A stretch of DNA of 64,000 nt from NCBI GenBank assembly GCA_002269645.1, contig NIVC01002769.1, positions 62,001 to 126,000 of the forward strand, written 5' to 3'. The translations under genes and the position numbers were made by a program. Of this stretch, positions 13,848-64,000 are shown one piece after another. This DNA is from Macrostomum lignano. Taxonomy: Eukaryota. Within the stretch, counting starts at the first letter, position 1. The number at the start of each line of letters is the position of its first letter. The notes under the pieces are model-generated. The model was not told the origin of the DNA and did not search any database. It worked only from the letters and a program-made list of their open reading frames with translations.

Positions 13848-13917
<70 letters not shown>

Positions 13918-23519: not shown

Positions 23520-25165
23520 AGTGAAGTGTTCAGTCGCGCTAAGAGTGAAACCCATTGAACTCGAAAGATAGAAAACCTTGAATTGCCAATTTGATTTAGA
23601 GCATGTGTAATGGCTGTGTTCGACAAGTGCAGCCTGAATGTCCGCGACTACCACATGCACTCGCTGGGGTTTGATTGTTTGTCAAAGAGCAGCTTGTGCG
23701 TCCAAGAATAGACGACGTTACACCAGACGTACTACTAGCTCGTACGATGGGTGTCTTCTCCTTTCTAACTTAAACCGGGTGACTAACTCTACTTTTAATT
23801 AGTAGTATAGGTTGATATCAGTATAATTATAGAACCGCTTGTTGCATTCTTTAGGTAAATTATTCTAATAAATGCGCAGCAGCCAGAATAATAGTTTGTT
23901 TTACTAGTATCTTTATGGATAAATTTAAACAATATTTTTAAGACGTAAAAAATTCACATTATTGCTCAATCGTGTTTAAGCATGAAACTGCACAATATTA
24001 AAAGAAATTTAAATAAAAGATTAATTTTAAGTCGTACATAGTATGCGTTTTTCATTACTTTACTTTCTTTTAAATCCACTCACTTCATACAATGCAATAG
24101 AAAAAATCTAGCTTATAAAAAAGATTACCATTTTAGTCAGCTGATTGATATTTTCCTAAAATCAATTGCTGGCACGTTTATTATCAGCCATAATTGTGCT
24201 GCGACCGCATTTCTAGACCAAACGTCATCTCTGTGTCAATTATACGCTAATGTGTGACAGGAAAACGTCACAACCGCACACCGTTTTCGTGACGCGGCTC
24301 TTCAGTGTGCATTTGTAATTAGTGAACAGAGAGGCGGCGACCGATTTAATGAGAGCGGGACGGAGGGAAGATGGTGGAAAGAGGTTGGGGTCACGGACGC
24401 AGCTTTAGTAGACCGACAGACCCGGCCTTCAAAGTTGTGTCCGTGCGCCTGTCTCAGCTATAGCGCTCGCTCACATCAAGGCTGCACGCCGTTCACTCCA
24501 GACTGAATAGAGATTTGACTGACAAAGCGTATTTCTCTCTTCTAATCCAGTTTCCGATCACGTGATTCTCAAGCGTCTCTACCAACAACTCTCATTCAAC
24601 ATTTATAAGTGAGTACGACACAGTGAATCAAATTCATAGTTATTTTCCCAAAGACCAGTTACTATAAAGTTACAGTTTGAACATTAAAGTATTAGTCTTA
24701 TTGTGCGCATTGTGGAAGACTATCTTGCCAGAGGACGCCAAGCCTAAGCGTGCCGCAATGCCGCCGCTTCGCACAAGCTGTTGCTTCTGCAGTCAGCTCT
24801 ATACTACGTGACTGGCTTTGTTTCTGCCCCCTTCAGGTAATTCGCGAGTGCGAGCGCGCGTATTTAATCCCGAGAATTGACCCACAATCCCTACGCCGCA
24901 AAAACAACAGCTGGCAATATAGTATAGAATTGCTATTCAAATCCTCCATAAGAATGGGAGAAAAGATCTGGAGAGAAAAATAAATCCGATCGCCTCATAG
25001 TCCTCAAAACCTTCGGGGGAGGAACTACGGAAGCTTGTAAAGCAGTAAATACTGAGTTACTGCAGTAAAAAAACAGCGCATAAATGTTGCACAGTACTTT
25101 GTTAGTCTGCGCGTGTCTTTATTAGATTTTTAAACTGCCGATTGCATCCTGATTTCTGAGTCCTC

Positions 25166-28100
25166 ATGTCCCTGGTGGTCTGGTCCCTGAGGCGCCTAGT
25201 CAACTATCGCGTGCTGCTCCTCATTCCGCTGTTGTGGTTCGCCGTCGCTCTCTTCTTGATCGGCTCTCACAACGGTGGCAGTGATCACCCGGTTGAAGAT
25301 CGCGGCGACAGACTACTGGACGGCAGCAAAGACGATGTCGACGACTCGGTCTTGGGCTCGATTCGGGAGGCGATTCGACTAGATAAAGAGCGCGTCAGAG
25401 CCGAGCTGTGGAATGCGGATTCAGCAGATAAATCCCGCTTAACTAAGAAGAGCAGAGACGATGTTGCTTCGGCAATCGATGCAGACATCCGTAACCGAAT
25501 GGCTAAGTTGAAACGTAAAAATGAGCAATTCAGGCAACGTCTGGCAGATTTGAGGAAGGCTGCCACTGAGACAACAACAGCCGAAGAAACAACGGAGGAA
25601 TCGACGACAGCGACAGCAAAGACAACCACAGGAACGACCAAAACTTCGTCCGTAACTGCAAAAACAAGCAAGACGTCGACTGAAACAACGCCGACGACAA
25701 CCCAGCAAGTCACCAGCAAGTTGCCGACCCCGACAGGTCCCGGCGAGCTCGGCGCCAGCGTGGTAGTCAACAAGCAGCTGCTGGATCAGCGCCAACTCGA
25801 ACGATTTGAGCGAGGCTGGAAGGAGAATGCGTTCAACGAATACGCCAGCGAACTAATCAGTGTGCAACGCAGGTTGCAGGTAATTTTTACCTTCGATTTT
25901 TTGTCAGAGTAGCTTTTTTGAGCATCGATAGATGAAGTATTTTTCTAGCTAGGGCCAATTAACTAGACTGAGCACTTTTCTGGGTGTTATTACTGAATAC
26001 TTGACCGATTTGTAGCACCTTTATGGCAATAGTTTTTTAGCGAAACATGATAATGCAGATAGATTCTGAGAAAGCTTCTTTAATGAAAAAAAACTTAGCG
26101 TTTGTTATAATTATCAGGATTACCGTCCAAAGGACTGCCGAAACAGAAAGTACTCGATTGAGCAGCTGCCAAACACCAGCGTCATCATGTGCATGCACAA
26201 CGAGGCCTGGAGCGTCCTTCTGCGCAGCATCCACTCTGTGCTGGACAGAGCACCGCCTGCTTTGCTGCACGAGATCATTCTAGTAGACGACTTCTCTAAT
26301 CGACCTCACCTAGGCCGACCCCTTGAAGATTACCTGGCAAAACTCGGTCGCGTACGCTTGTTGCGCAACAAGAAACGCGAAGGTTTAATTCGATCAAGAT
26401 TGGTTGGCGCGTCTGTGGCCACCGGGCAGACGCTGACCTTCCTCGACTCGCACATCGAGTGCACCAACGGCTGGCTGGAGCCGCTGCTCCAACGCATCCG
26501 AGACGATCGACGAAATGTCGCCGTGCCCTACATCGACGTTATCAACGAAGATAACTTCGGCTTCTTCCACGTCGCCAACGAGCGCATGGTTGTTGGTGGA
26601 TTCCGCTGGAACACCATGAGCTTCAGCTGGCAGTCGATGCCGCAGAGAATCCGACAGAATCTCAGCAGCCTGGCTCAGCCGGTGCCGACGCCAACCATGG
26701 CCGGAGGACTTTTCAGCATCGATAGGAGCTACTTTGACGAGCTTGGTCGATACGATGAAGGCATGGAGATTTGGGGCGCGGAGAATCTTGAAATCAGGTG
26801 AGCATAGATGTACATATTCGTAACTTATCTAATGAAAATCTATTAGTATACAGAGATAATGATTTTAAAAAAAGTACATCCACACATTTATCCAGCCAAT
26901 TTTAACCCGAATCACTCGTCAAATCTCATCCCAGCTGATCCTACTGTATGAGGATCCTGAGAGCGTGTGTACCTACCAGCCAACCAAACGATGAAAGTCA
27001 AAACCACTGTGCACCCTTTAAAAGTTGCTCGAGTGTTGTGCCTGACTCACATTCAAACAAAAGTATCCAAACAAATATTCCTTGCAGTTTCCGCATCTGG
27101 ATGTGCGGCGGTCGCATCGAGATTCTGCCCTGCTCCATCATCGGTCACGTGTTTCGCACCCGAAGCCCCTACTCCTGGGGCGAAGGGTCCGGCGATGTTC
27201 TCAAGCGGAACACTGTTCGAATGGCCGAAGTGTGGATGGATAATTTCAAGCATATTTATTATCGCCAGTTTAATAACCTGCTGGGCGACTTTGGCGATGT
27301 TTCTGAGCGACTTGCTCTCCGAAAACGGCTCAACTGCCATTCGTTTCGCTGGTACTTGGAGCACGTCTACCCTGAGCAGCTGAGATGGGGCAACAGCACG
27401 CGAATCGGGGTCATTCAGTCCTTCCGCCTAGTTGGCGGAGATGCCTGGTGCCTTGACGGAATCAGGCGACAAGGAGGCGCTGAAGTCAGCCTGCAGCGGT
27501 GCCACAACAAGGTATTGGAATGTGAATCTAATCACTGCTCTCGATCTTTTTCTTTCCCGCTACACTAAAAATGAGTTGTCAGTATCTATATTTCCTATCT
27601 AACATCCCTGATATCAACATAAAAATATATTGTGGCTTTATTACAACATCGTTGGGTCTAGTATTAGTGTTATAGTGCCGTATTGGGTCTCTTATTAGTG
27701 CCCCGTGCTTCCATATCTAGATATCCTATTCATATCTAGATCATTTTCTTCTATATCAAGATCCTCTCCATGCATTCATATCCGGGTCCTTTCCATCCAC
27801 ATCCGTGTCCTATCCTATCATATCCATTTCTTAACATATATTTCCGGGTCCTTTTCTTTCCCCTGCTCATTTATGTCAATCAATCAATCAATTGCAGGAA
27901 ATATAAAAATTAATATTAAATGAAAATAATAAATATACCATTAAAAACGCTAACCACACTACTATTACTCTACAGGGCGGCAATCAAGTCTGGACTCTGT
28001 CGCAGCACGGCGAGCTGATCCGTGAAACAGACTGCTTGCACTACAACGGTCGCGCCCTGACCCTCGTGGCCTGTCAAGGCTACGGAGGCTACGGCAAATA

Positions 28101-29818: not shown

Positions 29819-31838
29819 CTACTCAACAATGTCCGCAGACGACCTGATTGCACAGCATTTCACCGGATGTAGCAGTTTTTTGTGCAGCAACTCTGGTCGA
29901 TTTTGCACCCGTTTTGACAGCACCGTCCGCCTGTAGACGCTGTTGAAGTTCGTGACGATGACAGGAACTGGCAGGGCCACCGTCATGACCCCGGCTACAA
30001 CGCACGCTGAACCAATCAGCTTGCCAACCAGGGTTCGCGGCACTGCGTCTCCATACCCGACGGTGCACAAGCTGATCACCGCCCACCAGAACGCGTGCGG
30101 GATGCTCTGGAACTGCCGGTGCACCGCTCCTTCCGCTTGGTGAATCGCCGAAGCGAACAAAACCACGCTGACGCCGACGAAGAACAGAAACATGGTGAGC
30201 TCCCGGATGCTCATCCTGAGCGTCCTGCCCAGAATTTGCATCCCGGTCACGTAGCGGTACAGTTTGAAGATTCTCAACACATGGCTAAAGTGCAACGCTC
30301 GCATCAGGCCGCTGTCGGCGCAGAATCTTCCCAACGTTTCCATGGCAACTGAGATGAAGTAGGGCGTAAAGCTGATCGCGTCAAGCCAAACAGCCGCAGA
30401 ACGGACCAGGTGAGTTCGGGGCAGCGGGCAGACGGCCACTTTGATGCAGAACTCCAGAGCGAACCAAGAGACGCAAGCGAATTCGAGTCTGGTAAACCAT
30501 AGACTGTTGGAGCTGATTGACATTTGCTTGGGACCGAATACCAGCGGCAGGTAGCTGCAGAAGTCGGTCGATAGAGCATGTTTTTGCTTTTTTCAGTGAT
30601 GGGCCCGTTAGGGGTGGCAAGTTCCGCAGGTAAAAATAACATACTTGCTGAGTTCCCTCTCGGGTTGAATTGATAGATCCAACCACTTACATACTCTATA
30701 GTTTTAATTCCTTTTAAAAGGTATTCCGTCTCTAAAGGAAAATCTGAAGGGCCAAACAGTACGACGCACCTCAGCCACAAAAGCTGAGATCGTGTTTTTT
30801 TATGAGATAGCATTTTCAGATTGCGTGGCCAGATTGTCGTCCAATTCTCACCCAATCAGGACAAGGCTCAGTGAGTGTACATATTTGACGATTAGAAAGT
30901 CTGAGCTGCTGCACACCCTTTGTGAGCGAGCGTATGAAAGCGTTCTGCACGCTTGCATGTGCTCAGGGGTCAGGGAAACAGGCAGAACTACCTCTTTGCT
31001 AGTTGTAGGATTATATCGACGAAGACGTTGCACCAGTGTTCCCAGAAGCTTTACCAGACACTCACCGTGTCGAAGCCGCGGAGCTCCTGTTGCCATCCTC
31101 CCCGGTGCCATCAGCCGCGGTGCACGGGTCTGGCTGCGAGTGCAGGCAGTGCAGCGCCACTGACAGGATAATGATGGCCACGCTGGGCGCCACCAGCAGC
31201 CTGCCAAACTTGGTAGTCTTCGGATAGTGCAGCGCAGAGAACAGGCTGGTTCTCCAGCTCGGCTGACTCCAGTGCCGCACCGTGAGCTGCGAGTAACCTT
31301 CGGACACTAAGAAGCTGCGAATGACGGCTTCGTCAAGTTGAAAGAATCTCAGCTCCTCGTAGAACACCTCCTCGGGCACTTCATTTGGTCGACGCAGCCT
31401 GCCGCCAGACTGGTAATAGTTGAGTATCGCGGCGAACGAAGGGCGGTGCCTGTCGAAGAAGTACTGTCCTCGACTGGCGTCCCAGTACTGCAGCCGCTTC
31501 TGGTCGTTGCCAAGCAGAGTGCCGGGAAATCGACGCAGCGTTCTCAGCTGAGTTTCGAATATTTCTCCAGCCACGTTAATGCTGACTCGCTGGCAGCCGC
31601 TGTCGCAGCTTGATTCTTGTCGGCGTAAACTGCCAGCAACTCCGTCGACAACTGCGCTCCGATGCTGATGATGGGGTTGATGCGGAGCGGAGGCTGTAGT
31701 ACCGCTGTCTGCCGCATTCGCGTTGGTCTTCGATGCATCGTCCGGCTCGGGACAGGCGGCTTCGGCTGCGGCTGCCGCGGCGGATTTTTTGCACCGGCGG
31801 GACTTGCCCCGCTGCGCGACTCGGAGAAATGAGTACAT
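29819..31838 (-). CDS. KCNA: Voltage-gated K+ channel alpha subunit, Shaker/Kv1-type, with an atypical S4
   Basis: Exons 31838-31066 and 30554-29819 (in frame). T1 domain (INVAGEIFETQLRTL..YFFDRHRPSF..YYQSGGRLRRP), S1-S6, filter TVGYGD, S6 PVP. Start at ATG 31838 is assumed; an upstream exon is possible. Symbol is family-level only. Confidence 0.92.
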
Positions 31839-32573
31839 TGCTCTCAGCTCAGAGGCGCCCACAAGCGCTTAGAAGTTTTTTAGAACAAAAGCGTCAAAAC
31901 GCTATCATTGCTCCAAGTGGATAAGCATGCTTGTGGTGACGTCAAAGTTTTAGAGAATATTTAACGGTTGGTACTGGGTGGCTGTGTCTGCTAGAAGACA
32001 GATGGAAGCTGTCTGCAGAGAAGTGGCATTCTCAGCACTGACTGCTAACAATTGGTCAGCTCTGCTGGGGAGCGGCATGCAGCCATGAGGCTCAGAGACT
32101 CAGGGAGAGGCAGAGGGGAGCAGAGGGGAGCAGAGGAGAGGAGAGTGGTAGGCCGCGTCTTCCCTGCATAGGCACAAGTTGAGAAGTTTTGCGCCCAGTC
32201 ACAGCGATGGAGCACAGGCACGCGATGACAGCTTACAGCAGAACTACAAAAAAACGCTTGTTAGGCCTTTAAAAAAGTCCCCAAAAAGCGACTGGGAAGA
32301 CCGGCCGACTGCCGGAGAGGAGCGCAGAGCAGGAATGAGTTTATAGAAAAACACCAATTTGAGTCGGGGCTCAACAAAACACCCCATCCCCAAAACGCGT
32401 GGCATTTTACCGGCATTGAGTTGCGATTCACTGAATTTTGTTTTTATGATGCTCATCCTATCTATTGAAAATTTTTACTCAGTTTTTTCATTGAAATTCC
32501 CCCGCGTCGGGGTAATGGATTTTAATGGATGCCTAATGAATTTTCAATGGTAAGATGAAGCCAGAGTTTCATT

Positions 32574-33471
<898 letters not shown>

Positions 33472-34126
33472 GCTTCGGCGTTGTTTAAGTATATTAAAAC
33501 AATTCTCTATATGCATACATATAAGCTATGCGTATGTGTATATTACTTTATGATCCCAATTAACTAGAGCCAGCATATACACAGAAGAGTTTTAGCAAGT
33601 GGTAGGGAGAGAGTAGGAGTAACAGAGAGAGAGGAGGGGTGGCAAGAGGGAGAGTCCAGAATCACACAGCAGCATCAAAATTTGCCACACAGAGCCAACT
33701 ATTAAGCAATTAAGTTTCCATGCGTGAGGACTCCGCTGCTAACCGGCTGCAGCACCGGCCACAACCCCTTCATCCAGTGCAGCTGCTATGTATTATCTTC
33801 ACTAAAATTTGCCAACATGCGAGTTGCAGCTGAACTGTGCTCATGAAAACGGCGCTGCACTGTAAAAATGGCGTTGGTCCGTTAATTACAGGAGGTTTAT
33901 GAATGTGTCTGCGACTGCTTTCTAACAAGCGTAGTTGAAAATAAAGTGTGCATGCACATGTTCTGCAAATTACTCGGACAATTATTTCATCATTTAAAGC
34001 TACGCTAACGCTACCAAAGTAGCGGCTAAAAAGTTTATGGAAATGCATGGTTTCACATGCACCAGGGACGTGGACCGACAGAATTTTTCAACGGGTGCAT
34101 CTCTGAAAGCGCTGTTTCATTTGAGG

Positions 34127-34588
34127 GGGGTTAGCACCAGGGGCTTTAGCACCAGGGGCTTTAGCACCAGGGGCTTTAGCACCAGGGGCTTTAGCACCAG
34201 GGGCTTTAGCACCAGGGGCTTTAGCACCAGGGGCTTTAGCACCAGGGGCGCCAGCACCAGGGGCTTTAGCACCAGGGGCTTTAGCACCAGGGGCTTTAGC
34301 ACCAGGGGCTTTAGCACCAGGGGCTTTAGCACCAGGGGCTTTAGCACTAGGGGCTTTAGCACCAGGGGCTTTAGCACCAGGGGCTTTAGCACAGGGGCGC
34401 CAGCACCAGGGGCGCCAGCACCAGGGGCGCCAGCACCAGGGGCGCCAGCACCAGGGGCGCCAGCACCAGGGGCGCCAGCACCAGGGGCGCCAGCACCAGG
34501 GGCGCCAGCACCAGGGGCGCCAGCACCAGGGGCGCCAGCACCAGGGGCGCCAGCACCAGGGGCGCCAGCACCAGGGGCGCCAGCACTA
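34127..34588 (-). repeat. 15-bp minisatellite, reverse complement of the 23.1-kb array, about 30 units of two variants
   Basis: (agcaccaggggcttt)n followed by (agcaccaggggcgcc)n. Confidence 0.97.
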
Positions 34589-34781
34589 GACGACGCCATG
34601 CAGCACCATATACATGTACATGTACATGTACTTCTGGCAGCCGATTTTGCGGGCCGCATGGATTGCACAAAAATCTTACAAAAGGCACAGATCAGTAAGG
34701 TGTCCATGTATATTTTAATGTTTGCTACCTGCAATTTTACTAGGCCCTGCATTATTCATTATGCAATAACCATGATTTAGT

Positions 34782-41710: not shown

Positions 41711-42258
41711 AATGCTTAGATAAACACAAGTGGCAATAAGCTTCGCGCTTACCGTAAGTTGCGTCACTCGCAATAAGTGAGAAAAATTCATCTTCATTGA
41801 CTGTTGAGTATATATATATAAATACATCGGTTCCAATTCATTAGGAGCCTGACGATGCCTGTCGCTTAGCCAAAAATTCCAGTGCTCGCATTCTTATTTT
41901 TACGATTCTTACTAGAACAGGCGTCAGTGAACAATTTCTCTTGGACAATTCTAAAATAAAAAATACAAGAAAACTATCGGGGTAGCTTTATTCCGTCCGA
42001 TCCTCGCACACCGCTCCCCCCACTTCATTCTGCAACTCAATTCTTCCGCTTGGCGTAGCTAAGTTGCGTCACTGGTAAAGATCGAGAGACTTAACCTGCA
42101 CTCTCAAAAGTGGCGACTACAGATGGAATCTGCTATGATGGCGACTTTTCGATGGTGTTGAGCACAAATTTCATTTACCAGTATACTACAATCTACGTAC
42201 ATTACATCAAGTAAAGTTTACCGATGAATGTTCACGAAAGCAATTTTAGCTGCCGATT

Positions 42259-45200
42259 TCAGCAATCTGCTGTGATCTCGCGGACTTTTGATGACTCAGC
42301 GCGTTTTTTCTGCTGCTGATATTTCTCCTCCAGCCACTGAGGCACGTCACCGAACATCTTCGTGCTTTTTCTCAACAGCAGCCGCAGCAGCTCCACATCT
42401 TGGCAATTCGCTGCAGCAACCACCAGCTCCTGCTCGTCTGCATATTCCATGTGAGCCACATGCCGGATCCAGCGTTGAGCATCTGAGTCTCCTGTACCCA
42501 ACAACTCAAAGCGGAGCGCTTGCAGCAGAGCGTCGAAGTTTACAAAGAAGTAGGTGTTGTAGTTCTCTAATTCGAGGGGGATGTAATTGAGGATCACAGC
42601 AGTGCTATCTGAAATCGGTAGCTTAGGCCGCTTGCGAAGCCAAAAGCAGAACTTCCACGCGGAGTCTCGGCTCGTCAGGTGCTCCCTCACGAATTCCGTA
42701 GTCGCCTCACTCGCCGACCCCTCAGCGGGCCAGTCGATGCCTCTGCTTGCGCTGAACGGCCCGCAGTCGCTCACGACTTTCGCTGCAGCATCTCGGTCGC
42801 CGAACTTCAGGTAGCTCAGCGCTCTGAGAGACTCTCGCGCTGAGCGGGCGCAGTCTGGCAGCTTGTCGATCAGCTCCGAGAGACGCTGTCGGGACTCTGT
42901 GCTTCGGTCTTGGTCCGACACTCCGAGAAGCGACTCTCTCACGATGTCGTAGATCTCGTGGTACTCGCAGGTCTTCGCCGTTGACACCGGTTTATCAAAC
43001 TGCATGAGCGGCAGAATGAGGAACGGGTAGAAGTGGAATCGGCCCGAGTCGGTGACGGGTCGCAGGCTGTCCTCGAACTCCAGCAGCAGCTCAGGCAGCC
43101 TATCGATCGCATCTTTCACTGCATCGGCTGCCTCAGTCAACGCTTGAATCGCCTTCTCAGCTGATGAGGTGTCCACGCCTCTCAGGTACACAGCGGCATC
43201 GCGAAGGAAAAAGTGGTCCATGATCCTGGCGTCAGGTCTGCCTGATCTGCAGTCGCTCTCAAGCATCTGCAGCGAGCGTCTGGTGAGACTCACGAGATTC
43301 CGGGGGTCGTTCCACTGCTCAACCGGTGTCTGGTCGAGCATTCGGAACGCGATGGTTTTTGCGTGATACGACTTGAAGCCGTTGTGCCGGACGGCCTTCT
43401 TCAGCAGCCACTTGAGCGTGACGAACAGCTGGCCCTGCAGAGTGCTGACACTCCGCAGCAGCCGCCTCTCCAGGAAGCTGGTGCTCACTCGGAGCTGCTG
43501 GCCTTCTTTTCCGGGAGGCGCTGCGTGCACCACGTGACAGGGCGATAAGGCAGAGGTGAGATCGTGCTCTAGCAAACGCAAAACGGACTTGGGGATGTTG
43601 GAGACTCTGTTGGTGGCAAGTGGCGCGATAGGCGGGTAGCGGCAGAGGCGGCGGGCCTCAACAATGTCTACAGCCGGTCTCAGGATGGAGCCATTGTACT
43701 GAGTAGCTGGCCTGGATGCTGCAAGCGTAGTTTTGCGAGTGTAAAGAGCGTTAAAAATAACATTTTTCGTAAATCTCTCTTATAATTTTTTATTCTTTCT
43801 AATAATGAAGTTGCCGAAGTTTAGGACGAACTACTGTGTTAATATCATCTTCCTCCAGTGTTTTATGGAGCATGCCAATCATTTATTGAGCTATCCTTTA
43901 TTGCTTTTATTCCTTAGAATGCCGGGTAGGTGAAAAAGCAACTCTCACCGAAACCAGGGCAGAATACGTGTCCATTGCTGTACTTCAAAGTCTCAGCAGC
44001 CGTCTCTTCAGAGCACTCGCACACATCCTTCGCGTGCAACGAGATGCCTCTGTGCAGCTGCATGGCATCGATGTCGGACTCCACGCCAGTTCTGCCATCC
44101 AGCGAGACCAGGCTGTTCCCCCAGCCCTCGGAGAAGCTGCCCACCAAATAATAGTTATCTTTCTTTTGCCTTTTCCTCAGAATATCCTGCAGGACATCAG
44201 CCACAGCGCTCTGCAAGGCGGCTCTCGAGTCCACGAATCCCGACCGAAAGAGCTTCGAGTGCAGCTGCTGGCTGAGGTCCGAGTCGCTGATAGGAGCTCT
44301 GAATGAAGAGTTTCGTAACTTTTAGTGCATACTATGCGGAAATTTTATTTTGTGAAAGGGATTAAAGCTATCAATATTATTTTACACTGCATGTGAACCA
44401 GGAGCAATCGTCAAGTAAAAATATTTTTGCGGTGGCAGTTGTTACAATTCCTCATTTTGTTAAAAGTTTGCTGGGCATATAATAGGGTGTAGGGCACATT
44501 TGGCTGCCTTATTACGATTTGAGGGGTTTCATTATTTTGCATTATATATTCACGATATACAGAAAGTTCTCGCGGTTTCCGAAGTTACGGTTTGTAAGCC
44601 GTACATAAATTTCTAAAGGCTTCCAGAGGGTTTGGTGTGCAGAGGTATACAAATGTCTTTGACTGACGCAGAGCAAGCCAAATTTAAGTTTCAGCTACTG
44701 TGCCACAGTACCATTACATTAACTTAAAGTACTTTATTTCATTGAAGGCTTCAAAAACCACGAGAACTTTTTGCTTAACCCATTATTTTGCTCGAAACAA
44801 AGGAACTTGCAACTTTATGTTAAATTAACTGAATTCAAATGATCTCAGTTCTTGAGTTAAGTTATGTTATGTTATGTTATGTTATGTTATTTTCGCAACA
44901 TAACAGTTCTTGAGTCGAGCACATACCTTTTATTTGGTGGTTGCAGGCTTGCTCCCCGATTGCCATGCAGTGCACGCTGCAAAATCTCTACAGATTTTTC
45001 GCTACCAAAGTCCCGAGCGCGCTCAAGAGCCGATTGAATCGAATGCTGAGAGTCGTCGATTACTCGTATGTGGGAGCTGAGCAGCAACTCGACGATGAGA
45101 TAGTGGTCATTTTGTGAGGCAATGTAGAGAAGCGACTTGCCTGAGCTAATTTCAACATTGACGTGGGGTTGAGCATCAATGAGCAATTTAGCTACGAGAT

Positions 45201-46050
45201 GGCGGCCTTGCTGAGCTGCAATGTAAAGAGGCGACTCGCCGGTGTCTCGACGAAGGCTGACGTCGGCTTGCGCTTTGATGAGTGAGTCCACTACAAGATG
45301 GTGACCGTTACGGGATGCAATGTAGAGAGGTGACTCGCCATTGTCTTGTTGAAGGTTGACGTCGGCTTGTGCTTCAATAAGCGAGTAGACCACCTTATTA
45401 CGACCAAAGCGAGATGCAATGAAAAGAGGTGAAGAACCAGTTCTGCGTTGAAGATTGACATCGGCACCTGCTTTGATGAGCGAATTGACCACGTCGAGAT
45501 GACCGTACTGTGATGCGATGTAGATAGGTGCTTCACCAGGCATTCGCTGAAGATTGACGTCGGCCATTTCCTTGATGAGCAAATCGACTACGATATGATG
45601 ACCGTTGCAGGATGCAATGTACAGAGGTGAGGCACCAGTTCTTCGTTGAAGATTGACGTTAGCTTCTGCTTGAAGGAGCAGTTGAACCACCCGGTAGCAA
45701 CCAAATTTTGATCCGATGTAGAGAGGCGTCTCACCGTCGTTGTTTTGTAGATCGACGTCAGCTCCAGCTTTGATCAGCGTCCGAACCGCCAGATGTTGGC
45801 CGTGCTCTGAAGCGAGGTGAAGTGCAGAGGATCCATCGCAGTTTCTCTGGTCGATATTCAAGTTCTCCTGAGCAAGTCTTAGCAAGATTTTGTCCCTCCC
45901 TAAGCAGCTCGCAAGCATAACTAGTGTGATCTCGGATTCATTCCAAGTGTAAAAGGTGTCAATATTGTGTCCACAAGATATGTAATTCTCAAGGGCTTGA
46001 ATTTCGTTGGCTTCAATTGCGGAAATGATTGCAGCATTTTTGGGCTCCAT
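42259..46050 (-). CDS. Ankyrin-repeat / cGAS-like (Mab-21, cGLR) nucleotidyltransferase fusion protein, 3 exons, 977 aa
   Basis: Exons 46050-44927 (about 9 clear ankyrin repeats plus caps; donor AG|gtatgt), 44298-43949 (acceptor ttcattcag; VGSFSEG..SDID), 43718-42259 ([28 protein letters not shown], helical C-terminus). 2934 nt, all junctions in frame, no internal stop seen. Confidence 0.88.
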
Positions 46051-46409
46051 TGCAACCTCCTTGATTGGCTCGCCGCTGCTAAAGAAGGACCAAAATTAGG
46101 CAGACAGCCCTGCAATAATTCGCTGCAACAACTTCAATGTCGAAAGGTACCGTGTTGAAATATTGACTAGTTAAAGACCTAGGTCTGGAGTTCTGCACAA
46201 ATAAAAAGCAAATTGAGCTGTTCATAAAGTGAAAAGTCGGTCCTTATCTCTCCTTATCTTTAAATGCGAGCTACGTCACAGTGTTCGCTCACTGTACAAC
46301 AGACATTTAGCTAATATGGAATGCGGACGCAGATCGAAGAAGACGAATAACATTATAACATTTAGCTCGTAGCTATTACTGTGTTGGTTTGTGACTGGTC
46401 TTGACTAGT

Positions 46410-48075
46410 CAATAACCAGTTTTAAACCCCTCTCCCTCTGTCCGTGCTGTGTGGGGGGGGGGGTGCTTGGCTCTGCGTGCGTCGGGTGGTGGCCTGGTGG
46501 GGTGGGCTTTAGCCTCTGCGCCGTCGCCCCTTTTATTGGCGTCTCACTCAGTTGAATCTGCGTTTTCGGCTGCCTGCATGAGCTCAATTTTTTTAGCTCT
46601 AAGATTTTTTCATCTGGCACCATTTCTGACCTAAACCGGTTAACAGTAGCCCAACTGCGAGTGGCCCTAAGAGACAATGGCCTACCGGTTTCGGGAAACA
46701 AGCAAGAGCTTGTTGAGCGGCTTCAAGCTGCTCCACCACAGCCAGGCGACGCCGAAGTCCCAGACTATGCAGAAGGGGACGAAGCAGATACTGCGATAAA
46801 TCAGCTGCTGAACGGGGAAAAATCGGAGAATATTGACGCCACGGTCGCCACGAACATTGCCCAAGAGAGCCGACTTGATAGCGAAATTCAGCAAGCTAGG
46901 TCGCGGATCGAGCTGCTAAAACTGAAGAAGCGAGAGGCGCAACTCCGGCAGGAAATCGGTCTGCATGCCGCCGCCACAGCTGAAGAGGTCGACCCGATTT
47001 CGGCACTTTTTGGCTCGCTTTCAGCGAAGGCGCGGCCGGCTCGACGCCCTCTGCTCATCCCGAACTTCGTGGATGGTAGACGGGATCAGATGACAGGGCT
47101 GACGCATGATCGCGACCGGGGCGCGGCGAAGAGCGGTGCGTCCAGCCTCGACAGCATCAGCACTGGGCAATGGATCGCTGCTAACGCCAGAATAATGCTG
47201 CAGCTGCTTGAGTCCAACCAGCTCGTCTCAAAAGGAAGCGATGGAAGCATCGATGTGCGGCGCTTGAAAGCTTACCTCAATTTCAACATACATATCGGCT
47301 AGCTCATGGAAGCAGACTACGATTGGAATGTCGTCCTACGATACGATCAGGACATGCGTCTGTTACAGCACGAGCGGCAAAGAGACTGGGACAGCCCAGA
47401 CCTCCATATCTTAATCAAGCACATGACTGCGCCTAAGAACCTGCGAAAGACAGGCAGCAAAAAGTCTTCCAGATGAAGCCAAGCAACATCATGAGGCCAG
47501 ACGATTTGCGGCCTCTTCAACAGCAACCGTGACTGCCAGAAGCAGCCTTACAACTTCGCACATGTCTGCCGCATCTGTGAGGCTCCGCACCCGGCCCATC
47601 AGCACCAGCACAACAATGGTTCGGGTCCAAAAAACTGATTGACCTCCGCCTCGCCTGCTGCCTTGCCTGCTCCGTCTTTAACTTCGTCACCCAACTCGCC
47701 TACAGCTTCATTCTTATCCATCTCGCCTCATCCGTCATCGGCTACTGCCGCGCCTGGTGGTGCCATTGCTGCCTCCAGATCGTCTAACCCGCCAACCCCG
47801 CCGCCAGCCCAGCTGCCAGCTCAGCCGCCAGCCCAGTCACCGGTCTCGACCTGGTCGCTTTCGCCATCAGCTTCGGAGCCTGTTCTAGCCAACGATCCGG
47901 ATGCGGAGTTTTTCCGTACTGGCCTGCGCAATGGATTCCTCATCGTCAACAAGCCAGCTCAATCGGCCTCCGAATTCAGCATCTACGAATCCGCTCTTTG
48001 TGAGGACACCTACCAGCTGGTTGAGTCTCAGATCAGAGAGGAACTTGAGACTGGCCGCTATGTGTGCGCTTCAGA
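46410..48075 (+). mobile_element. DIRS/Ngaro-like tyrosine-recombinase retrotransposon, 5' part (SAP-containing gag-like ORF1 and start of RT ORF)
   Basis: LNRLTVAQLRVALRDNGLPVSGNKQELVERL (SAP); WNVVLRYDQDMR..WDSPD and C..FN..C..NFAHVCRIC..HP (DIRS gag); DPDAEFFRTGLRNGF..ESA..VESQIREELETGRY (start of pol). Contains stops; truncated near 48075. Confidence 0.75.
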
Positions 48076-54458: not shown

Positions 54459-56143
54459 CAAATTAAAACAAAGCAAGTTTAGAGAAAAAGCGAAAGTGAC
54501 GCGTGAAGAAATAAAATATCATAAATAATTATTTTAGAGGCAGGTGCAGGAGGTGGTGTGCCAAGAGTTAACCGAGGTCTTTGTTATTAGTCACTCCTGT
54601 TAAGTCCATTTAAGTCCGCGACCCCTTAGTTGTAATCCTGACTCCATTAACCCTCTACGAAAAATGAAGCTAGTCCAGTCAATGGGATTAATTAGGAAGT
54701 TGCTTGCATTTTAATCATTTTCAATACCCAAAGAATCAGATTCCAATTCTATGCATTGAGTCTCGCGGAACCACGAATGTTTTTATTTAAATAGCGTTTA
54801 AATTCAAGTTAAAGATGAATCAGTAACCGAATTTAGACAATCCAGTGAAATGTCGGTGTCTTCAGTGTCATCAAAACAACCAAATAAAACTTCGAGCAGG
54901 AGCTCGGGTCAGACTTGATCCGCTCAGCTCATCCTGCTGTATGAATCGAAACTCTGAAATTTTTCAGTCGAAGTTGCAATTGGGAAATCTGGAATTAATT
55001 CTGAAAATGATTTGGATATGTATCTAAATCCTTGATTAGCTAATGAGGCCGTATGTCAAGTTCAGGATAAATACTGGGTATTCAATCACTGGAGATATGG
55101 CCGACTTACGCTTATTGATTGCTTCTCCTGCTGCCTCTGCCGCTGCATCTGCTGTAAAATGCTCATCACTTTCTCTAACTTTTTGTCCATTTTCTCGTTG
55201 TCCTCTCTCTGAGCAACGAGCACATCCTGCCGCAAGTCCTTGACCTGGTTCTCAACGTGCGCCTTGAGCACATCGATGTCTCCTTTGTTCCGCTCCACAG
55301 GCCACTGCAGCCGGGGCCGGTGGTCTCGCAGCTGCTCAGCCTGGTAGATCAGGAAGCGCTTGAAGTCCTTGGGGTAGCCGCTGAAGTCTTCTTTGTGCTG
55401 CCACCACGGCTGGAACGGAAAAGTGTCTTATCTGATGTCACTGTATATTGAAAAAACGAACAAAAAGTGTCTGAAAAATGATTTTGGAATTGAAAGTAAC
55501 GAAGCACTCCGTCCTGATCAGTTAAGCATGAAAAATTTGTCAGCCTAAAGCATAATATGACATAAAATTAGAACGCTGCTCGGTAAAAGCTGCTTACCTC
55601 AGAATCTTCATCACCAGCAACTGGGAAATATTCAGCGGAGCAAGGCTGGCACCGACAAGCGTAGCACCTTTGCAGAAGTTTCCAGGCGTAGTGTGGGAAC
55701 GACAGCGGTGGCGGAACTGGACTGACCTCCGCGAACTCCCGCAGCAGATTGAACAGATTCTTGCGCCAGAGAGCCTCCGCCCTGCTCGCCAACTCCGTCA
55801 CGGTGCGGCTGAACAGCGCGATCAGCAGATTCCACATCACTATGGTGACCAGAAGGAGATACACGAACACCAGAATTCCGTTGTAAGCCTTATTTCCAGC
55901 TTCATCCGCACAGGACTCTCCAGTCGCGAGGCTGCTGGAGTTGCACGACTCGAACTGCGCGCTCTCCACCATTCCGAAGGCCAGAGACACGGGCACCGTG
56001 AAAATCTTTGTCAGAACCTGAGCATCTCTTGAGTCTGAAAAGGCCGGAAACAGCAGGTTGAAGAAGAAGATGCCGAATGAGTACACCAGCACCAGCAAGA
56101 CCAGCATGAATGGCACCAGGTCGCTGAACAGCAAGCTCTTTAG

Positions 56144-58117
56144 CATACATGCGCAACTGCTGGCCGACCTGGCCGATCCGGCCACCGTAAATTGTGGCTG
56201 ACCAGGGGTAAGTCGCAAAATTGAGTCAACCAAAAACAGAAAAACACAAGAACCAAGAAAGGCAAGAGGAAAGCGAAAGAAAGAGCAGTTCAGGGAAAAT
56301 GGTGAAGCAAAAGAAAAACAATTCGCAAAAGAAGCAAACTAAGTTGTAAAAATAATCAGGTAAGTCGCAAAAAGGATCAGGTAAGTCGCAACAGGAATCA
56401 GGTAAGTCGCAAAAGGGTTAGGTAAGTCGCAAAAAGGATTAGGTAAGTCCCAAAAAGGATTAGGTAAGTCCCAAAAAGGATTAGGTAAGTCGCAAAAGGA
56501 TCAGCTAAGTCGCAAAAGGGTTAGGTAAGTCGCAAAAGGGTTAGATAAGTCGCAAAAGGATTAAGTAAGTCGCAAAAAGGATTAGGTAAGTCGCAAAAAG
56601 AAGCAACTAAGTCGCAATAAGAGGAAAGTAAGTCACAATCAGAGGCAATCAGGGGGTAGTAGGTGCAAGTGTGGCAGGAGAGCAAAAACAGAATAGAAGC
56701 CTTCAACCACAGACAAGATCTTTGAAATCAGAAGCCCGCGTCATTTCTTAAACTCTGGAGCAGGGGTCGGCAAACTCCGGCTCGCGAAGCCCCTCTATCT
56801 GGCCCTCGCCCCTCGGGTTCTTTGAAACTTCCTAACTACGAGTAGCAAGGTTGGTGTCTCTTCAACTCTCATCTCTCTCTTCTTCTCTACCTTGCCTCCC
56901 CTCTTCTCTCTCTCCCCCTTTTCCCTCTTCTCTCTCCTCTCATTTTTACTCTCCTCTCTTCTCCCCCTTTCTCTCTACCCTTTCTCCTCAATGCCCTCTT
57001 CTCTCCTCTTATCTTCAGAAAAAATATGTGCATATTTTCTTACTTCAAAGTAGAGGGAATAGAAGATTAGAGATAAGCAAACAGAGGAGAGGCGAGCGAT
57101 GCGATGGGAGAAAAGATAGAAGAGGAGAGAAAAGCTGAGGGAGGAAAAAGAGATGAGAGAGAAGAGGAGATGAGAGAAAAGAGGAAAGAAAAGATGATGG
57201 ATAAGATCAGAAGAGAGGAAAGAGGAAAGAGGAGAGAGTAGATGAGAGACGAGAGGATAAAGAGGAGATGAGAGGAGAGTGAAGAGAGGAGAGATGAGAG
57301 AGTAGAAAAGAGAGGAGAGATAATGAGAGAGTAGAGTGGAGAGAGACGAGAGGGAAGATAAGATGAGAGAGTAGAGTGGAATGGAGAGAGACGAGAGGAG
57401 AGATAAGAATGTAGAGAGGAGACAGAAGAGATAGGAGAGGAGAGGAAAGAGAGGAGAGAGGAGAGGAAAGAGAGAAGGGATAAGGGATGAGAGAGAAAAG
57501 AAAAAGAGGATGAGAAGATTGAGGAATGGAGAGAATTTGCAAAGGCCTCAAATCTTAGTTTAACATGCATTACTCCCATCTTTGCCTTTTTCCTAACTGT
57601 TAACAAGTTTTTGTTTGAGCATGACTTCAAATTTAGAATCTATGCAAAAATAGTTCCGGGAATTAGAATTCAGTGGTTTAAAAATCTGTGGGTTTTCACA
57701 GCTTGTATCTCTACTGGATTCGTATTCTGCATCTGATGAGCCATCTGAATCAGGGCTCTCATCTTCCATGCCAAATCGTCTAGCAAATCGTTCTTGAGCT
57801 ATAGGTCACACTGTATTCACTTCACTTACTTCTGGACATTCATGAATCATGACTTTTGTAGTATGCTCACTACACTGTACTGACAATTTACTAATTGCTT
57901 CATGCCGCCACTAGATGACACTGATTAGCTGTTATAAAAACGCGGAATCTGCACGCAGCACTAATTAGCTGGCGAGGCATTTACCTTAAAAAATATGGTC
58001 ATAGTTACTCCTGCCGTTTACCTAAAGTTTTTGCTTGGCTCTTTCATAGGTAAGTCGCATTTTTTATCGAAAACTAAGTCGCACGGCCAGCGTAATTTCA
58101 GAAGTTGCGCATGTATG
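56144..58117. mobile_element. Non-autonomous hAT-type transposon (1974 bp) inside the TRP coding exon
   Basis: 15-bp TIR catacatgcgcaact / agttgcgcatgtatg; perfect 8-bp TSD ctctttag (56136-56143, 58118-58125); ~21-bp subterminal repeats ggtaagtcgcaaaaaggatta (~56355-56630); nested hAT-Charlie-like end caggggtcggcaaact at 56761. Confidence 0.93.
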
Positions 58118-59123
58118 CTCTTTAGCATATTGATTTTCGGCCCGGTGACCTTGAAGTAGCTGAGCAGGGCCACGGAGCGGAAGCCGAGAAACAGGAATGA
58201 GACGCTGAGCACAACCTGGCAGCTTCGCAGGAGGCTGGAGTCGCTCAGGTGGCCGAGCAGCTTCAGGACCAGACCTGCCCACATCAGCAGCAGCCCAGCC
58301 ATGTCGAAGTAGTTGAACAGGTCAATGAAGTAGCGTGGAATTCTTATGTCAAGCCCGAGTATTGTCAAGTCCTTCAGAGAAATACTGTTAATAAGTTGAT
58401 TGACTTCCTGCAGCGTGAACGACAGTGCGTACAACAGCAGGATGATGTCTGGCACTGGAGATTGTTGAGTCCGACTGAAGTCCGTCACGTACCAGGCAAA
58501 GTAGAGCAGGAAGACCAGGAAGGAGATGGAGTAGATGATGAATCGCTGTTGAATTGTGACTTTTGCTGCAATGTTGCAGGTGCAACAGCGTTGAGGTCTG
58601 CTCCACGACAACGGTGGATGCCTCTTCCAATGCTACTCCACCAAATTGCTGATGCACTTAGTTGCGAACAAGTCGTCGCAGTCAAGAGTCTCTACAAGGT
58701 CCATGACTGATTTGAACTTTTGAGACGCTGTATCATTTTCGGAAGAAAGTTTCCGTGCTTCGTTGCTCCTTTTCTGTTGAGGCTTGTCATTGTCCGCATG
58801 GGAGCTTTCCCGTCGCAGGAGTGATGAATGAGGTGCCAAAAACCTCGGCCCAGCATTGCGCTGGTCTTCCGAGAGACGAAACGAACCAGTCAGGTAGGTG
58901 AACAGAAGTTCTCGCGTGTCTTCATCAGCATTTGCGTAAAGGTGGTCCAGAATGTTGATAATGGTGTTATAAGCTTGAAGTTGCACTCTCTGAAGAATCT
59001 CACTCTTATCGACTTTCGTCTTTAGGTAAGTGAGCAGTCTCAGGGTCTGAGGAATGATGTCGAATTGAGGCAACAACATGAGGTCAGTGAGAAGCTTTGG
59101 CTTCTCGAGCAGCACAGCGTATT

Positions 59124-60922
59124 CACGGACTACTTAAGTAGAAGGACGCGACACGCGCAAAACGTGCAAATTTTATTGGAGGCTGAATATTCAATTTTAT
59201 GTAGCTCGACTCCAGAAACTCGCCGAAGTGTAGTTTTTTCACATGATACAAATAATTTAGTCCTTGTTCATGTAACATATGTAATGAATGATTAAAACGA
59301 TGCAGAAACCTTAGAAATTAGTTTCAAGCGACGAAAACTAACTTTTTCTGGTGAGTTTCGAGTCTCGACGTGCGGCATTTGTAGCACAAAATATAGCTCT
59401 TCATTTTGATATAGCACTTATTTTAAGTGATTCTTTTAGCTGTTCATTGTTACTGTGAAGCGGACCTTTTTGACCTGGTCATAAGAAAACCTATCGCAAG
59501 ATGTACAGACATATAACAGATACCACTGATTCTGCGCCAATCGTATCGGATAAATAGAGTCAAGACGAACTAAGACGAAAGATTTTAAGAACACGAAGAA
59601 CACGAACAGCAGTACAGTGACAGTTGTAAAACCTCAGCCTTGGACACTTCATTGTCACAACAGTTCTGGAGCATCCTCCTTAAGATGTGTGTACACTTGT
59701 TTGTGAGGAAGCCAACCACTCGAGTATTTGTTCCATGTATACAAAATAGCAACCTCCATGGCCTTGCCTATAGATAGAGAATTCTTTCTCCAGACCATCC
59801 AATTGAAAGTCACCTGAAAAGGATAAGGAAAATAGCTGCATAGCATGAATACTTAATGATACACAACCTAAATAAAACAAGTTAATACTTATAATATTAT
59901 TCATACCTAGCATGACATTTAAATTGGAAGTGAGATAAATTGAATTTATTAATTAAGTGAGTTAAATTGAAAGTGGATATATTGTGACATCTGAATACAA
60001 TACTTCCATGGGTGACCATGTAACTGCTGCCCCCCCCCCTTAACCAGAGATAGTGTGTCGCCATTGAATTTTTATATATTAACAGAAAAACTGATTAAAA
60101 CAATTTAGGCCCTATATGCCTCTGAAAGAATATAAGATGAGTAAGTTCTTAAAAACATAAATATCTATAAGTTCTATAGCAAAAATATTAATGCAGTATA
60201 TATTTTTGAAGCATGGGGCTATAATTATAAATAGACTGACATGAGTCATAAAAAATATATAGGTTTACCAGTAAAATGATTAATAAGAATAGAATACTTA
60301 AAGTTAAATACTTATATTAATAGGCCTATATTTTATAAATTATCTTAGTCTAAGCCTAGCTAAGTCAATAATAGATAGAAGAGATAGCTTATAGGTTTAC
60401 CAAGAATACCAACTAATGCCAATGGTAATGATATACAATAGTTAGCTAGGCCCTATACCTAGATAATGTAGATATAGGCCTATGCCTAATAGTTTAATAA
60501 TGAAATACTGCAGGCCCCTATGCTGTAATAACAAATAGCTACATTATATTTTATCATCGCCAGGGTAGTAGCAGTGGGCCCTGACTAGCAAATGTTGATA
60601 AATTTCCAAAAAGTATACTTGCATAGATGGCCTATGCCTCCTATGGTCTACATACAAATTCTAATTTAAATTAGGTTAGGCTAGCTATGTATAAACGATA
60701 CATTTCTAAACAGTACTAAGCTAGACGGAAATTATGTATTGATAAAAAATGGGACAAAAACAAAAAACACTCTAAAAACTAAAAAGATCTGCATTCTATG
60801 ATAAAAACATTTCAATGCCCTGCTAAATCTATAGTATACGCTAAGGGAAATTCAGCCTCCAAAAAAAATTACACGAATCGTGCGTGTTGCGTCCTATATA
60901 AACGACAATTAAGTAGTCCGTG
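59124..60922. mobile_element. Non-autonomous hAT-type transposon (1799 bp) inside the TRP coding exon
   Basis: 14-bp TIR cacggactacttaa / ttaagtagtccgtg; perfect 8-bp TSD agcgtatt (59116-59123, 60923-60930); removal restores ..LMEYA|VLLEKP... Confidence 0.93.
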
Positions 60923-63900: not shown

Positions 63901-64000
63901 ATGTCTTCAAGTCTTGATTTTCAAATGCAGCATACACGACAGTTTCTCCATCCTCGTCTGGATTGAAGAATCGCTGCTTGTCTTCCACTTCGGAAACGAG

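What the first reader, a model, noticed from the sequence alone, without database searches (positions are those of the whole stretch)
42259..46050. Intact ankyrin-repeat cGAS-like receptor hidden across three ORFs
Seen: the ankyrin ORF ends in a canonical phase-2 donor and splices in frame into a nucleotidyltransferase with GS, DxD and a third Asp (VGSFSEG..SDID..VDIV), plus [15 protein letters not shown] and HFF motifs and a ~200-aa helical C-terminal extension; there is no cGAS zinc-thumb between ERRLL and LKWLL. Established: cGAS-like receptors (cGLRs) of the Mab-21 family make cyclic dinucleotide second messengers in animal innate immunity, and ankyrin arrays are protein-recognition modules. 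Inference: a catalytically competent cGLR triggered or autoinhibited through its ankyrin array, i.e. sensing a protein ligand rather than naked nucleic acid. This is the best candidate for an uncharacterised signalling system here.
Basis: partly seen in the sequence, partly recalled or inferred. Interest (0 to 1): 0.86.

Follow-up and report, generated by a model that had tools for sequence, protein, structure and literature searches.

The report
Flatworm ankyrin-fused cGAS-like receptor gene
This is an intact three-exon flatworm gene for a cGAS-like enzyme fused to ankyrin repeats; it belongs to a Macrostomum family that was already catalogued and partly screened in 2023, and its trigger, product and receptor are still unknown.

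Summary
On the minus strand, 46050..42259, three exons join through two canonical GT..AG introns (phase 2 and phase 1) into a stop-free 977-aa protein. It has about 10 ankyrin repeats, a cGAS/Mab21-type nucleotidyltransferase core with a complete active site (G428-S429, D450-x-D452, D509) and no zinc thumb, and a ~270-aa C-terminal domain. That domain has no structural match in the PDB or in BFVD.

Every relative found, in searches of 5.8 and 1.8 billion proteins, comes from the flatworm Macrostomum lignano. The best is 75% identical. The relatives share the ankyrin fusion, the intron positions and the catalytic residues.

The fold model is confident (pLDDT 88) and its top 34 PDB matches are cGAS chains. 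A profile-profile comparison with coral and mollusc cGLRs gives 98.5% probability and aligns every catalytic motif.

The kind is not new. Li et al. 2023 (preprint PMC9980059) list ankyrin-cGLR fusions, including these M. lignano proteins. They cloned five of them without the ankyrins, and none is among their 15 active enzymes.

The idea that the ankyrin array senses a protein ligand remains an untested inference. Whether Macrostomum has STING could not be checked here.

Verdict: a new member of a known kind, of moderate interest.

The parts
42259..46050 (-). Whole coding region of the ankyrin-cGLR gene: 3 exons, 2 introns, 977 aa plus stop.
   Evidence: Spliced model is in frame. tblastn of the model finds only this one copy in the window. 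The same 3-exon layout occurs in the M. lignano paralogs of L001.
44927..46050 (-). Exon 1: start codon at 46050-46048, the whole ankyrin array (aa 1-368) and the first half of the linker. It ends in a phase-2 donor, AG|GTATGT.
   Evidence: Pfam Ank_2 E 4e-93. Nine exact 33-aa repeats plus caps. An in-frame stop lies 15 codons upstream. The N-termini of paralogs P0054 and P0007 start within about 5-6 residues of this Met.
44299..44926 (-). Intron 1, 628 nt, GT..AG. It contains a (GTTAT)n microsatellite.
   Evidence: The intron is at the same protein position in the L001 paralogs.
43949..44298 (-). Exon 2: the spine helices and the first part of the nucleotidyltransferase N-lobe. It carries the activation-loop G428-S429 (44144..44118 = VGSFSEGWG), D450-x-D452 (44081..44061 = ESDIDAM) and a conserved CxC (44021..44004).
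   Evidence: G53, S54, S74, D75 and D77 (602-aa numbering) are invariant in alignments A1 and A3. They align to GS and (D/E)xD of coral and mollusc cGLRs.
43719..43948 (-). Intron 2, 230 nt, GT..AG, phase 1.
   Evidence: The junction residues ..GF|A|SRPA.. are matched by annotated P0001 and P0002 (..GY A SRPA..).
43081..43718 (-). Exon 3, first part: the rest of the NTase core. It holds the third catalytic Asp D509 (43677..43654), RVSTSFLE (43491..43468), LKWLLKK, KSYHAKT (43374..43354) and HFF (43218..43204), which make up the Mab-21 C-lobe.
   Evidence: PDB sequence hits are cGAS C-lobe only (E 5e-3 for the single protein, 1e-4 for the profile). Pfam Mab-21_C hits all 10 family members scanned, best E 7.6e-10. 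Foldseek's top 34 matches are cGAS chains, E 1e-6.
42259..43080 (-). Exon 3, second part: a family-specific C-terminal domain (aa ~705-977), mostly helical with a small sheet, acidic (pI 5.1), followed by the stop codon at 42261..42259.
   Evidence: AF2 on its own gives pLDDT 81 and pTM 0.82. No significant structural match in the PDB (best E 0.29) or BFVD (best E 0.82). It is conserved across the family ([10 protein letters not shown] and FxNF motifs). dN/dS is 0.43-0.60 against M. lignano paralogs.

Best explanation
The locus is an intact gene of a Macrostomum-specific expansion of ankyrin-fused cGAS-like receptors (Mab21 superfamily).

Shown:
- A 977-aa protein with about 10 N-terminal ankyrin repeats.
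- A bilobal cGAS-type nucleotidyltransferase core with a complete metal-binding triad (D450, D452, D509) and activation-loop G428-S429.
- cGAS-like nucleotide-pocket motifs (R568/S570/E575, Y609/K612). Their pocket role is recalled from cGAS, not tested here.
- No zinc thumb.
- A conserved ~270-aa C-terminal domain that matches no known fold.

Inferred:
- Like other cGLRs, it rests inactive. On binding a ligand it polymerises NTPs into a cyclic or linear oligonucleotide second messenger, which a downstream receptor reads.
- The ankyrin array and the C-terminal domain are the lineage-specific regulatory or recognition modules. The array differs strongly in repeat number and content between close paralogs.
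- The ligand is therefore probably not plain dsDNA or dsRNA.

Confidence in the identity (intact ankyrin-cGLR with a competent-looking active site) is about 0.9. Confidence in the mechanism as a whole is about 0.5. The figure given (0.6) is a blend of the two.
For: - Gene model: in frame with canonical introns. Paralogs have the same junctions and intron positions.
- Homology: 39 and 49 clusters, all M. lignano, most carrying Ank domains.
- Active site: invariant GS, SDxD, D, R-x-S-T...E, Y-x-x-K and HFF across paralogs down to about 30% identity.
- Profile comparison with coral and mollusc cGLRs: hhalign probability 98.5%, E 1.5e-15, with every motif in register.
- Fold: AF2 pLDDT 88.4, pTM 0.89. 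Foldseek's top 34 matches are cGAS chains; Sp-cGLR1 (8gjy) is rank 35 and MAB21L1 (5eog) rank 50.
- Selection: dN/dS 0.37-0.60 at dS about 0.3 against M. lignano paralogs, so the gene is constrained but fast-evolving.
- Ankyrin array: repeat number varies among close paralogs, about 10 here against 13 and 18 in L001.
- Literature: the ANK-cGLR class, with M. lignano members, is listed in Li et al. 2023. The five ankyrin-less constructs carry no 'active' label when assayed with poly I:C and 45-bp dsDNA.
Against: - There is no transcript, protein or activity evidence for this locus.
- Pfam's N-lobe model PF03281 does not hit. Mab-21_C is below the gathering threshold for this copy (E 0.049). Membership therefore rests on the paralogs, the profile-profile comparison and the fold.
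- The five tested relatives are only 28-37% identical to this protein. Their lack of an 'active' label could also mean misfolding, or that the family is not an enzyme.
- The NTase core here is basic (pI 9.37), which fits nucleic-acid binding.
- No STING or other receptor was looked for successfully. Flatworms studied so far lack cGAS and STING (PMC4117786, PMC13563047).
- dN/dS of 0.4-0.6 is only moderate constraint.
Confidence: 0.6

Rival explanations
1. It is a classical nucleic-acid sensor. dsRNA or dsDNA binds the basic groove of the NTase core, as in cGAS or Drosophila cGLR1. The ankyrin array serves only localisation, oligomerisation or partner recruitment.
For: The NTase core has pI 9.37. 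Li et al. report that nucleic-acid-sensing cGLRs have pI above 8.5. The closest solved structures are DNA-bound cGAS. All cGLR ligands known so far are nucleic acids.
Against: Core pI ranges from 5.8 to 9.6 among paralogs, so a basic groove is not a family constant. The full-length pI is 6.4. The five ankyrin-less M. lignano constructs are not among the enzymes that responded to poly I:C or 45-bp dsDNA. There is no zinc thumb.
Confidence: 0.25
2. It is a non-enzymatic Mab21-like scaffold or pseudoenzyme, like MAB21L1 or MiD51. It would act by protein-protein interaction through the ankyrin and C-terminal domains.
For: MAB21L1 (5eog) is among the fold matches. No activity has been reported for any family member. 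The protein carries large protein-interaction modules.
Against: GS, DxD, the third Asp and the motifs that line the nucleotide pocket in cGAS (recalled, not tested here) are invariant or nearly so across paralogs as low as 30% identical. Li et al. state that Mab21L1/2/3 lack a predicted functional active site. This family has one.
Confidence: 0.08
3. The locus is not a working single gene. Either it is a silent young paralog on its way to becoming a pseudogene, or the ankyrin exon and the NTase exons belong to separate transcripts.
For: No exact protein is on record for this locus. The family is large and tandemly duplicated. dN/dS of 0.4-0.6 is relaxed.
Against: The 2934-nt frame is open across three exons, with canonical splice sites and compatible phases. 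Annotated M. lignano models join ankyrin and NTase at the same positions. dN/dS is below 1 in every part.
Confidence: 0.07

Closest known systems
ANK-cGLR fusions of Macrostomum lignano (e.g. PAA86972.1, PAA45980.1, PAA68676.1; closest here BOX15_Mlig030176g1 / Mlig022307g1), catalogued in Li et al. 2023 (PMC9980059)
   Same: Same architecture (ankyrin array + cGLR core + the same C-terminal domain), same intron positions and same invariant catalytic residues. Identity is 75% to the nearest member, and 28-37% to the five that were cloned for the screen.
   Different: This exact sequence is not in the protein collection. Its ankyrin array has about 10 individually diverged repeats. The nearest M. 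lignano paralogs have 13-18 homogenised repeats.
Vertebrate cGAS
   Same: Bilobal Mab21 nucleotidyltransferase fold. Its chains are the top 34 Foldseek matches (E 1e-6, TM 0.5-0.58 on the target). It shares the GS loop, the acidic triad, and the R-x-S-x-S..E and SYH-x-KT motifs.
   Different: This protein has no zinc thumb and no disordered basic N-terminus. It has an N-terminal ankyrin array and a ~270-aa C-terminal domain. It has a 9-residue longer loop between GS and DxD and a shorter, Cys-rich N-lobe insert. Sequence identity is only about 15%.
Invertebrate cGLRs with solved or tested function (Stylophora Sp-cGLR1, PDB 8gjy; Crassostrea Cv-cGLR1; Drosophila cGLR1)
   Same: The fold match (8gjy rank 35; profile hit E 2.7e-3) and the absence of a zinc thumb. 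hhalign against coral and mollusc cGLRs gives 98.5%.
   Different: Those are single-domain enzymes activated by dsRNA or dsDNA. This one has two extra domains and an unknown ligand and product.
MAB21L1/2 (developmental Mab-21 proteins)
   Same: Same superfamily and fold (5eog, rank 50).
   Different: According to Li et al., MAB21L proteins lack a predicted functional active site. This family keeps all catalytic residues.

Membership tests
cGAS-like receptors (cGLR; Mab21 superfamily) | Bilobal cGAS/Mab21 nucleotidyltransferase fold | tested here: met
   AF2 pLDDT 88.4, pTM 0.89. Foldseek's top 34 matches are cGAS chains at E 1e-6; Sp-cGLR1 is also matched. hhalign against coral and mollusc cGLRs gives probability 98.5%, E 1.5e-15 over 278 columns.
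cGAS-like receptors (cGLR; Mab21 superfamily) | Active site: h[G]S activation loop, [D/E]h[D/E] and a third Asp | tested here: met
   G428-S429, D450-I-D452 and D509 are present. They are invariant or nearly so in the family and align in register with the cGLR motifs. Whether the three acids converge in three dimensions could not be measured, because model coordinates are not exposed.
cGAS-like receptors (cGLR; Mab21 superfamily) | Match to the Pfam Mab-21 models (PF03281 N-lobe, PF20266 C-lobe) above threshold | tested here: inconclusive
   PF03281 gives no hit. PF20266 gives E 0.049, 14.2 bits, below the cut-off of 24.1 for this protein. However, all 10 family members scanned hit PF20266, best E 7.6e-10.
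cGAS-like receptors (cGLR; Mab21 superfamily) | Ligand-dependent synthesis of a nucleotide second messenger | not testable with these tools
   Needs biochemistry. Five distant paralogs were cloned without their ankyrins and are not labelled active in Li et al. Table S3.
cGAS-like receptors (cGLR; Mab21 superfamily) | A cognate receptor (STING or other) in the same genome | not tested
   None is in the window. The literature reports STING absent from Schistosoma and Schmidtea and says nothing about Macrostomum.
ANK-cGLR fusion class (Li et al. 2023, Fig. 1C, Table S2) | Ankyrin repeats and a cGLR core in one polypeptide | tested here: met
   One open frame runs across a phase-compatible intron. 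The same fusion is in annotated paralogs, and 36 of 49 family clusters carry Ank Pfam domains. cDNA for this locus is not available.
cGAS proper (vertebrate DNA sensor) | Zinc thumb (H-x5-CC-x6-C) between the R-x-S-x-S-x-x-E motif and the C-lobe helix | tested here: not met
   Only 17 residues ([17 protein letters not shown]) lie between E575 and L593, with no Cys or His.
MAB21L1-like non-catalytic Mab-21 proteins | Loss of the catalytic acidic residues | tested here: not met
   The triad is present and conserved.

The most novel reading that the evidence does not exclude
Flatworms are otherwise reported to have lost both cGAS and STING. In Macrostomum, an expanded ankyrin-cGLR family might be a STING-independent second-messenger immune system. 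In this reading the fast-turning ankyrin array recognises proteins, such as pathogen effectors or modified self. The orphan C-terminal domain would be a new regulatory or output module.
Probability: 0.15. Interest if true: 0.8.

Novelty: new member of a known kind. Interest (0 to 1): 0.38.

Why it matters
No cGLR has yet been shown to sense anything other than nucleic acid, and ankyrin- or TPR-fused cGLRs have no known ligand. Macrostomum lignano is a tractable laboratory flatworm with RNAi by soaking and transgenesis. It carries dozens of these fusions, while other flatworms studied lack cGAS and STING.

That makes the family a practical place to ask two questions. What do the appended repeat domains do? 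What reads the signal if STING is absent?

This particular locus adds one more intact copy, from a subclade that has not been tested biochemically. It also shows how quickly the ankyrin array changes between close paralogs. It does not reveal a new kind of system.

Tried and rejected
1. The search of protein representatives with alignment A2. The profile kept about 280 ankyrin columns, so the top 150 were swamped by giant ankyrin proteins. Only the extra M. lignano family members were usable. The same mistake affected the first PDB profile search, which was repeated with the ankyrin-free alignment A3.
2. A search with the neighbouring Kv-channel ORF, meant to identify the species. The best hits were 44-48% identical environmental contigs and no Macrostomum protein appeared. 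It is therefore unresolved whether the window is M. lignano or a congener.
3. An exact look-up of the 387-aa ankyrin ORF. Nothing is on record.
4. Structural homology for the C-terminal domain. Nothing was significant in the PDB or BFVD. The UniRef label 'Terpenoid synthase' on fragment P0014 has no support here.
5. A test for positive selection on the ankyrin array. It was rejected because dS is about 1.05 in that exon against about 0.3 elsewhere. The aligned repeats are therefore not orthologous, and the M. lignano arrays are homogenised.
6. A second copy or a partner gene in the window. There is none.
7. An upstream coding exon. It is not needed, because the paralogs' N-termini agree with the ATG at 46050.
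Full report
**What is there.** The finding lies on the minus strand. Reading 46200..42200 in three frames, the three long ORFs join through two canonical GT..AG introns.

- Exon 1 is 46050..44927. It ends AAAAG|GTATGTG, leaving two bases of a codon.
- Intron 1 is 628 nt.
- Exon 2 is 44298..43949. It ends TTTCG|GTGAGAG, leaving one base.
- Intron 2 is 230 nt.
- Exon 3 is 43718..42259, stop codon included.

The joined CDS is 2934 nt and encodes 977 aa without an internal stop. An in-frame stop lies 15 codons upstream of the ATG. The N-termini of paralogs P0054 and P0007 begin within about 5-6 residues of the equivalent position, so 46050 is a credible start. tblastn of the model finds only this one copy in the window.

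**Domains.** Residues 1-375 are ankyrin (Pfam Ank_2 E 4e-93). The layout is an N-cap, nine repeats in exact 33-residue register (aa 39-335) and a C-cap. Within the array, the canonical binding-surface positions (2, 3, 5, 13, 14, 33) vary more than the framework: 2.2 against 1.3 bits. This is usual for ankyrin scaffolds.

The remaining 602 aa give only weak direct sequence signals:

- Pfam Mab-21_C gives E 0.049, below threshold.
- PDB phmmer hits only the cGAS C-lobe, at E about 5e-3, over KSYHAKT..HFF.

**Relatives.** A search of 5.8 billion proteins with the 602-aa part returned 39 clusters, all from the flatworm Macrostomum lignano. The best are 75% identical, and most carry N-terminal Ank domains. 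A profile search with an ankyrin-free family alignment returned 49 clusters, again all M. lignano or unnamed members of the same family. The weakest has E 6e-37, and nothing lies between that and 1e-3. Ten further family representatives from the 1.8-billion-protein library are also all M. lignano.

At the sensitivity of these tools, then, the clade is confined to Macrostomum and is sharply separated from other cGLRs. Annotated paralogs have the same residues at both junctions. The M. lignano contig NIVC01001606.1 (L001) holds two tandem copies and a fragment, with the same three-exon layout and the same intron positions. This independently supports the splice model. No cDNA for this exact locus could be consulted, and no identical protein is on record.

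**Is it a cGAS-like enzyme?** Four lines of evidence agree.

1. All 10 family members scanned hit Pfam Mab-21_C, best E 7.6e-10.
2. A profile of the family hits only cGAS and Sp-cGLR1 in the PDB.
3. hhalign of the family against seven coral and mollusc cGLRs, taken from Table S3 of Li et al., gives probability 98.5% and E 1.5e-15 over 278 columns. The motifs pair as follows: VGSFSEGWG with GS.SEG, SDID with (D/E)xD, PAVD with the third Asp, RVSTSFLE with RLSFS.AE, KSYHAKT with SSYF.KT, and HFF with NFF.
4. An AlphaFold2 model built on 14 family sequences is confident (pLDDT 88.4, pTM 0.89). Its top 34 Foldseek matches in the PDB are cGAS chains (E 1e-6, TM 0.5-0.58 on the target). Sp-cGLR1 is at rank 35 and MAB21L1 at rank 50.

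The catalytic residues are G428-S429, D450, D452 and D509. R568, S570 and E575 of RVSTSFLE, and Y609 and K612 of KSYHAKT, correspond to nucleotide-pocket residues of cGAS. That correspondence rests partly on my knowledge of cGAS and partly. All these residues are invariant or nearly so in alignments that go down to about 30% identity. That argues for a working active site and against a MAB21L1-like scaffold.

There is no zinc thumb. Only 17 residues, without Cys or His, lie between E575 and L593.

Pfam's N-lobe model PF03281 does not hit. By the Pfam criterion alone, membership is therefore inconclusive. By fold and profile comparison it is met.

**The C-terminal domain.** Residues ~705-977 form a conserved, acidic (pI 5.1), mostly helical domain with a small sheet. 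Modelled alone it is confident (pLDDT 81, pTM 0.82). It has no significant structural match in the PDB (best E 0.29, TM below 0.3) or in BFVD. It appears to be a family-specific module of unknown role.

**Evolution.** Against the two M. lignano copies in L001:

| Region | dS | dN/dS |
|---|---|---|
| Exon 3, whole | 0.27-0.33 | 0.43-0.56 |
| Exon 3, NTase part | – | 0.37-0.42 |
| Exon 3, C-terminal domain | – | 0.43-0.60 |
| Exon 2 | about 0.5 | about 0.45 |
| Ankyrin exon | about 1.05 | not interpretable |

The gene is constrained but fast-evolving, as immune gene families often are. The ankyrin exon behaves differently. The M. lignano arrays hold 13 and 18 almost identical repeats, against about 10 diverged repeats here. 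The aligned repeats are not orthologous, so no selection test is valid there. What can be said is that the array turns over by repeat gain, loss and homogenisation far faster than the enzyme.

**What is already known.** Li et al. 2023 (preprint PMC9980059) surveyed about 3,000 cGLRs.

- They state that 87% are single-domain proteins, but that some carry TPR or ankyrin modules.
- Their Table S2 lists M. lignano proteins (PAA86972.1, PAA45980.1, PAA68676.1 and others) with Ank_2 domains.
- Their Table S3 shows five M. lignano family members cloned from the start of the NTase part, without the ankyrins.
- Active enzymes carry a label in that table, and the five do not.
- The 15 active enzymes are described as coming from insects, anemones, molluscs, hydras and corals.
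- The five constructs are 28-37% identical to the protein here, so this subclade is untested.
- The same paper notes that most platyhelminths have no cGLR beyond Mab21-like proteins.

Wu et al. 2014 report loss of cGAS and STING in Schistosoma. A 2026 study found neither in Schmidtea. I found no statement about STING in Macrostomum and could not test for it.

**How it most likely works.** Shown: an intact ankyrin-cGLR gene with a competent-looking active site. Inferred: a ligand-gated nucleotide-second-messenger synthase. Its lineage-specific ankyrin array and C-terminal domain would set what is recognised, or would hold the enzyme off.

Nothing demonstrates it, however. The core of this copy is basic (pI 9.37), so nucleic-acid sensing stays a live rival. 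The pseudoenzyme and non-functional-locus readings are less likely, for the reasons given under the rival explanations.

**Verdict.** The gene is a new member of a known kind, the ANK-cGLR fusions, in a lineage where the downstream pathway is an open question. Interest is moderate.

Noticed in passing
window 44021..43510 (-), protein C468, C470, H485, C517, C552, H553: A set of Cys and His residues in and around the N-lobe insert (Cx[22 protein letters not shown]) is invariant or nearly so across the family. This is unusual for a cytosolic enzyme. It may be a metal site that replaces the missing zinc thumb.
   Followed up: no
L001 10001..11640 and 23950..26070 (M. lignano NIVC01001606.1): The ankyrin exons of the two tandem M. 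lignano paralogs contain 13 and 18 almost identical repeats (SSPLYIASQNGHHEVVDRLLKARADVNLQ). This points to recent within-array amplification or homogenisation. The annotated gene P0001 spans both copies (10001-29445), so that model probably merges two genes.
   Followed up: partly
window 46079..46084 (-): A pyrimidine-rich TTCTTTAG acceptor-like site lies 29 nt upstream of the ATG. It could be a 5'-UTR intron acceptor or a spliced-leader trans-splice site. Read from the sequence only.
   Followed up: no
window 46661..47302 (+): An ORF with a SAP domain (Pfam E 1.8e-7) starts about 600 bp from the cGLR start codon and runs in the opposite direction. No known link to the cGLR gene.
   Followed up: partly
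window 55568..63988 (-): A 1039-aa ORF carries about ten tandem ~70-aa repeats (..EDKQRFFDPDEDG..ILH.AA..) and ankyrin hits. Downstream ORFs on the same strand include an Ion_trans hit. It looks like a TRP-type channel gene with an unusual repeated N-terminus.
   Followed up: partly
window 29819..31862 (-): This is a Kv-type potassium channel gene (BTB_2 tetramerisation domain, E 1.7e-25; transmembrane exon). Its best database relatives are only 44-48% identical environmental contigs, with no Macrostomum protein found. The species of the window is therefore not pinned down.
   Followed up: partly
window 22956..23660, 32555..33553, 34037..34780: Long tandem repeats give repetitive ORFs in several frames: (GAPGAKAP)n / (STRGF)n at 22956-23660 and 34037-34780, and (IYLS)n at 32555-33553.
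   Followed up: no
window 9116..10675 (+) and 12960..14408 (+): These ORFs look like retroelement remnants. One reads as a Ty3/gypsy-type integrase and the other as an RNase H-like segment followed by (ER)n. This is judged by eye from the translations and was not scanned against Pfam.
   Followed up: no
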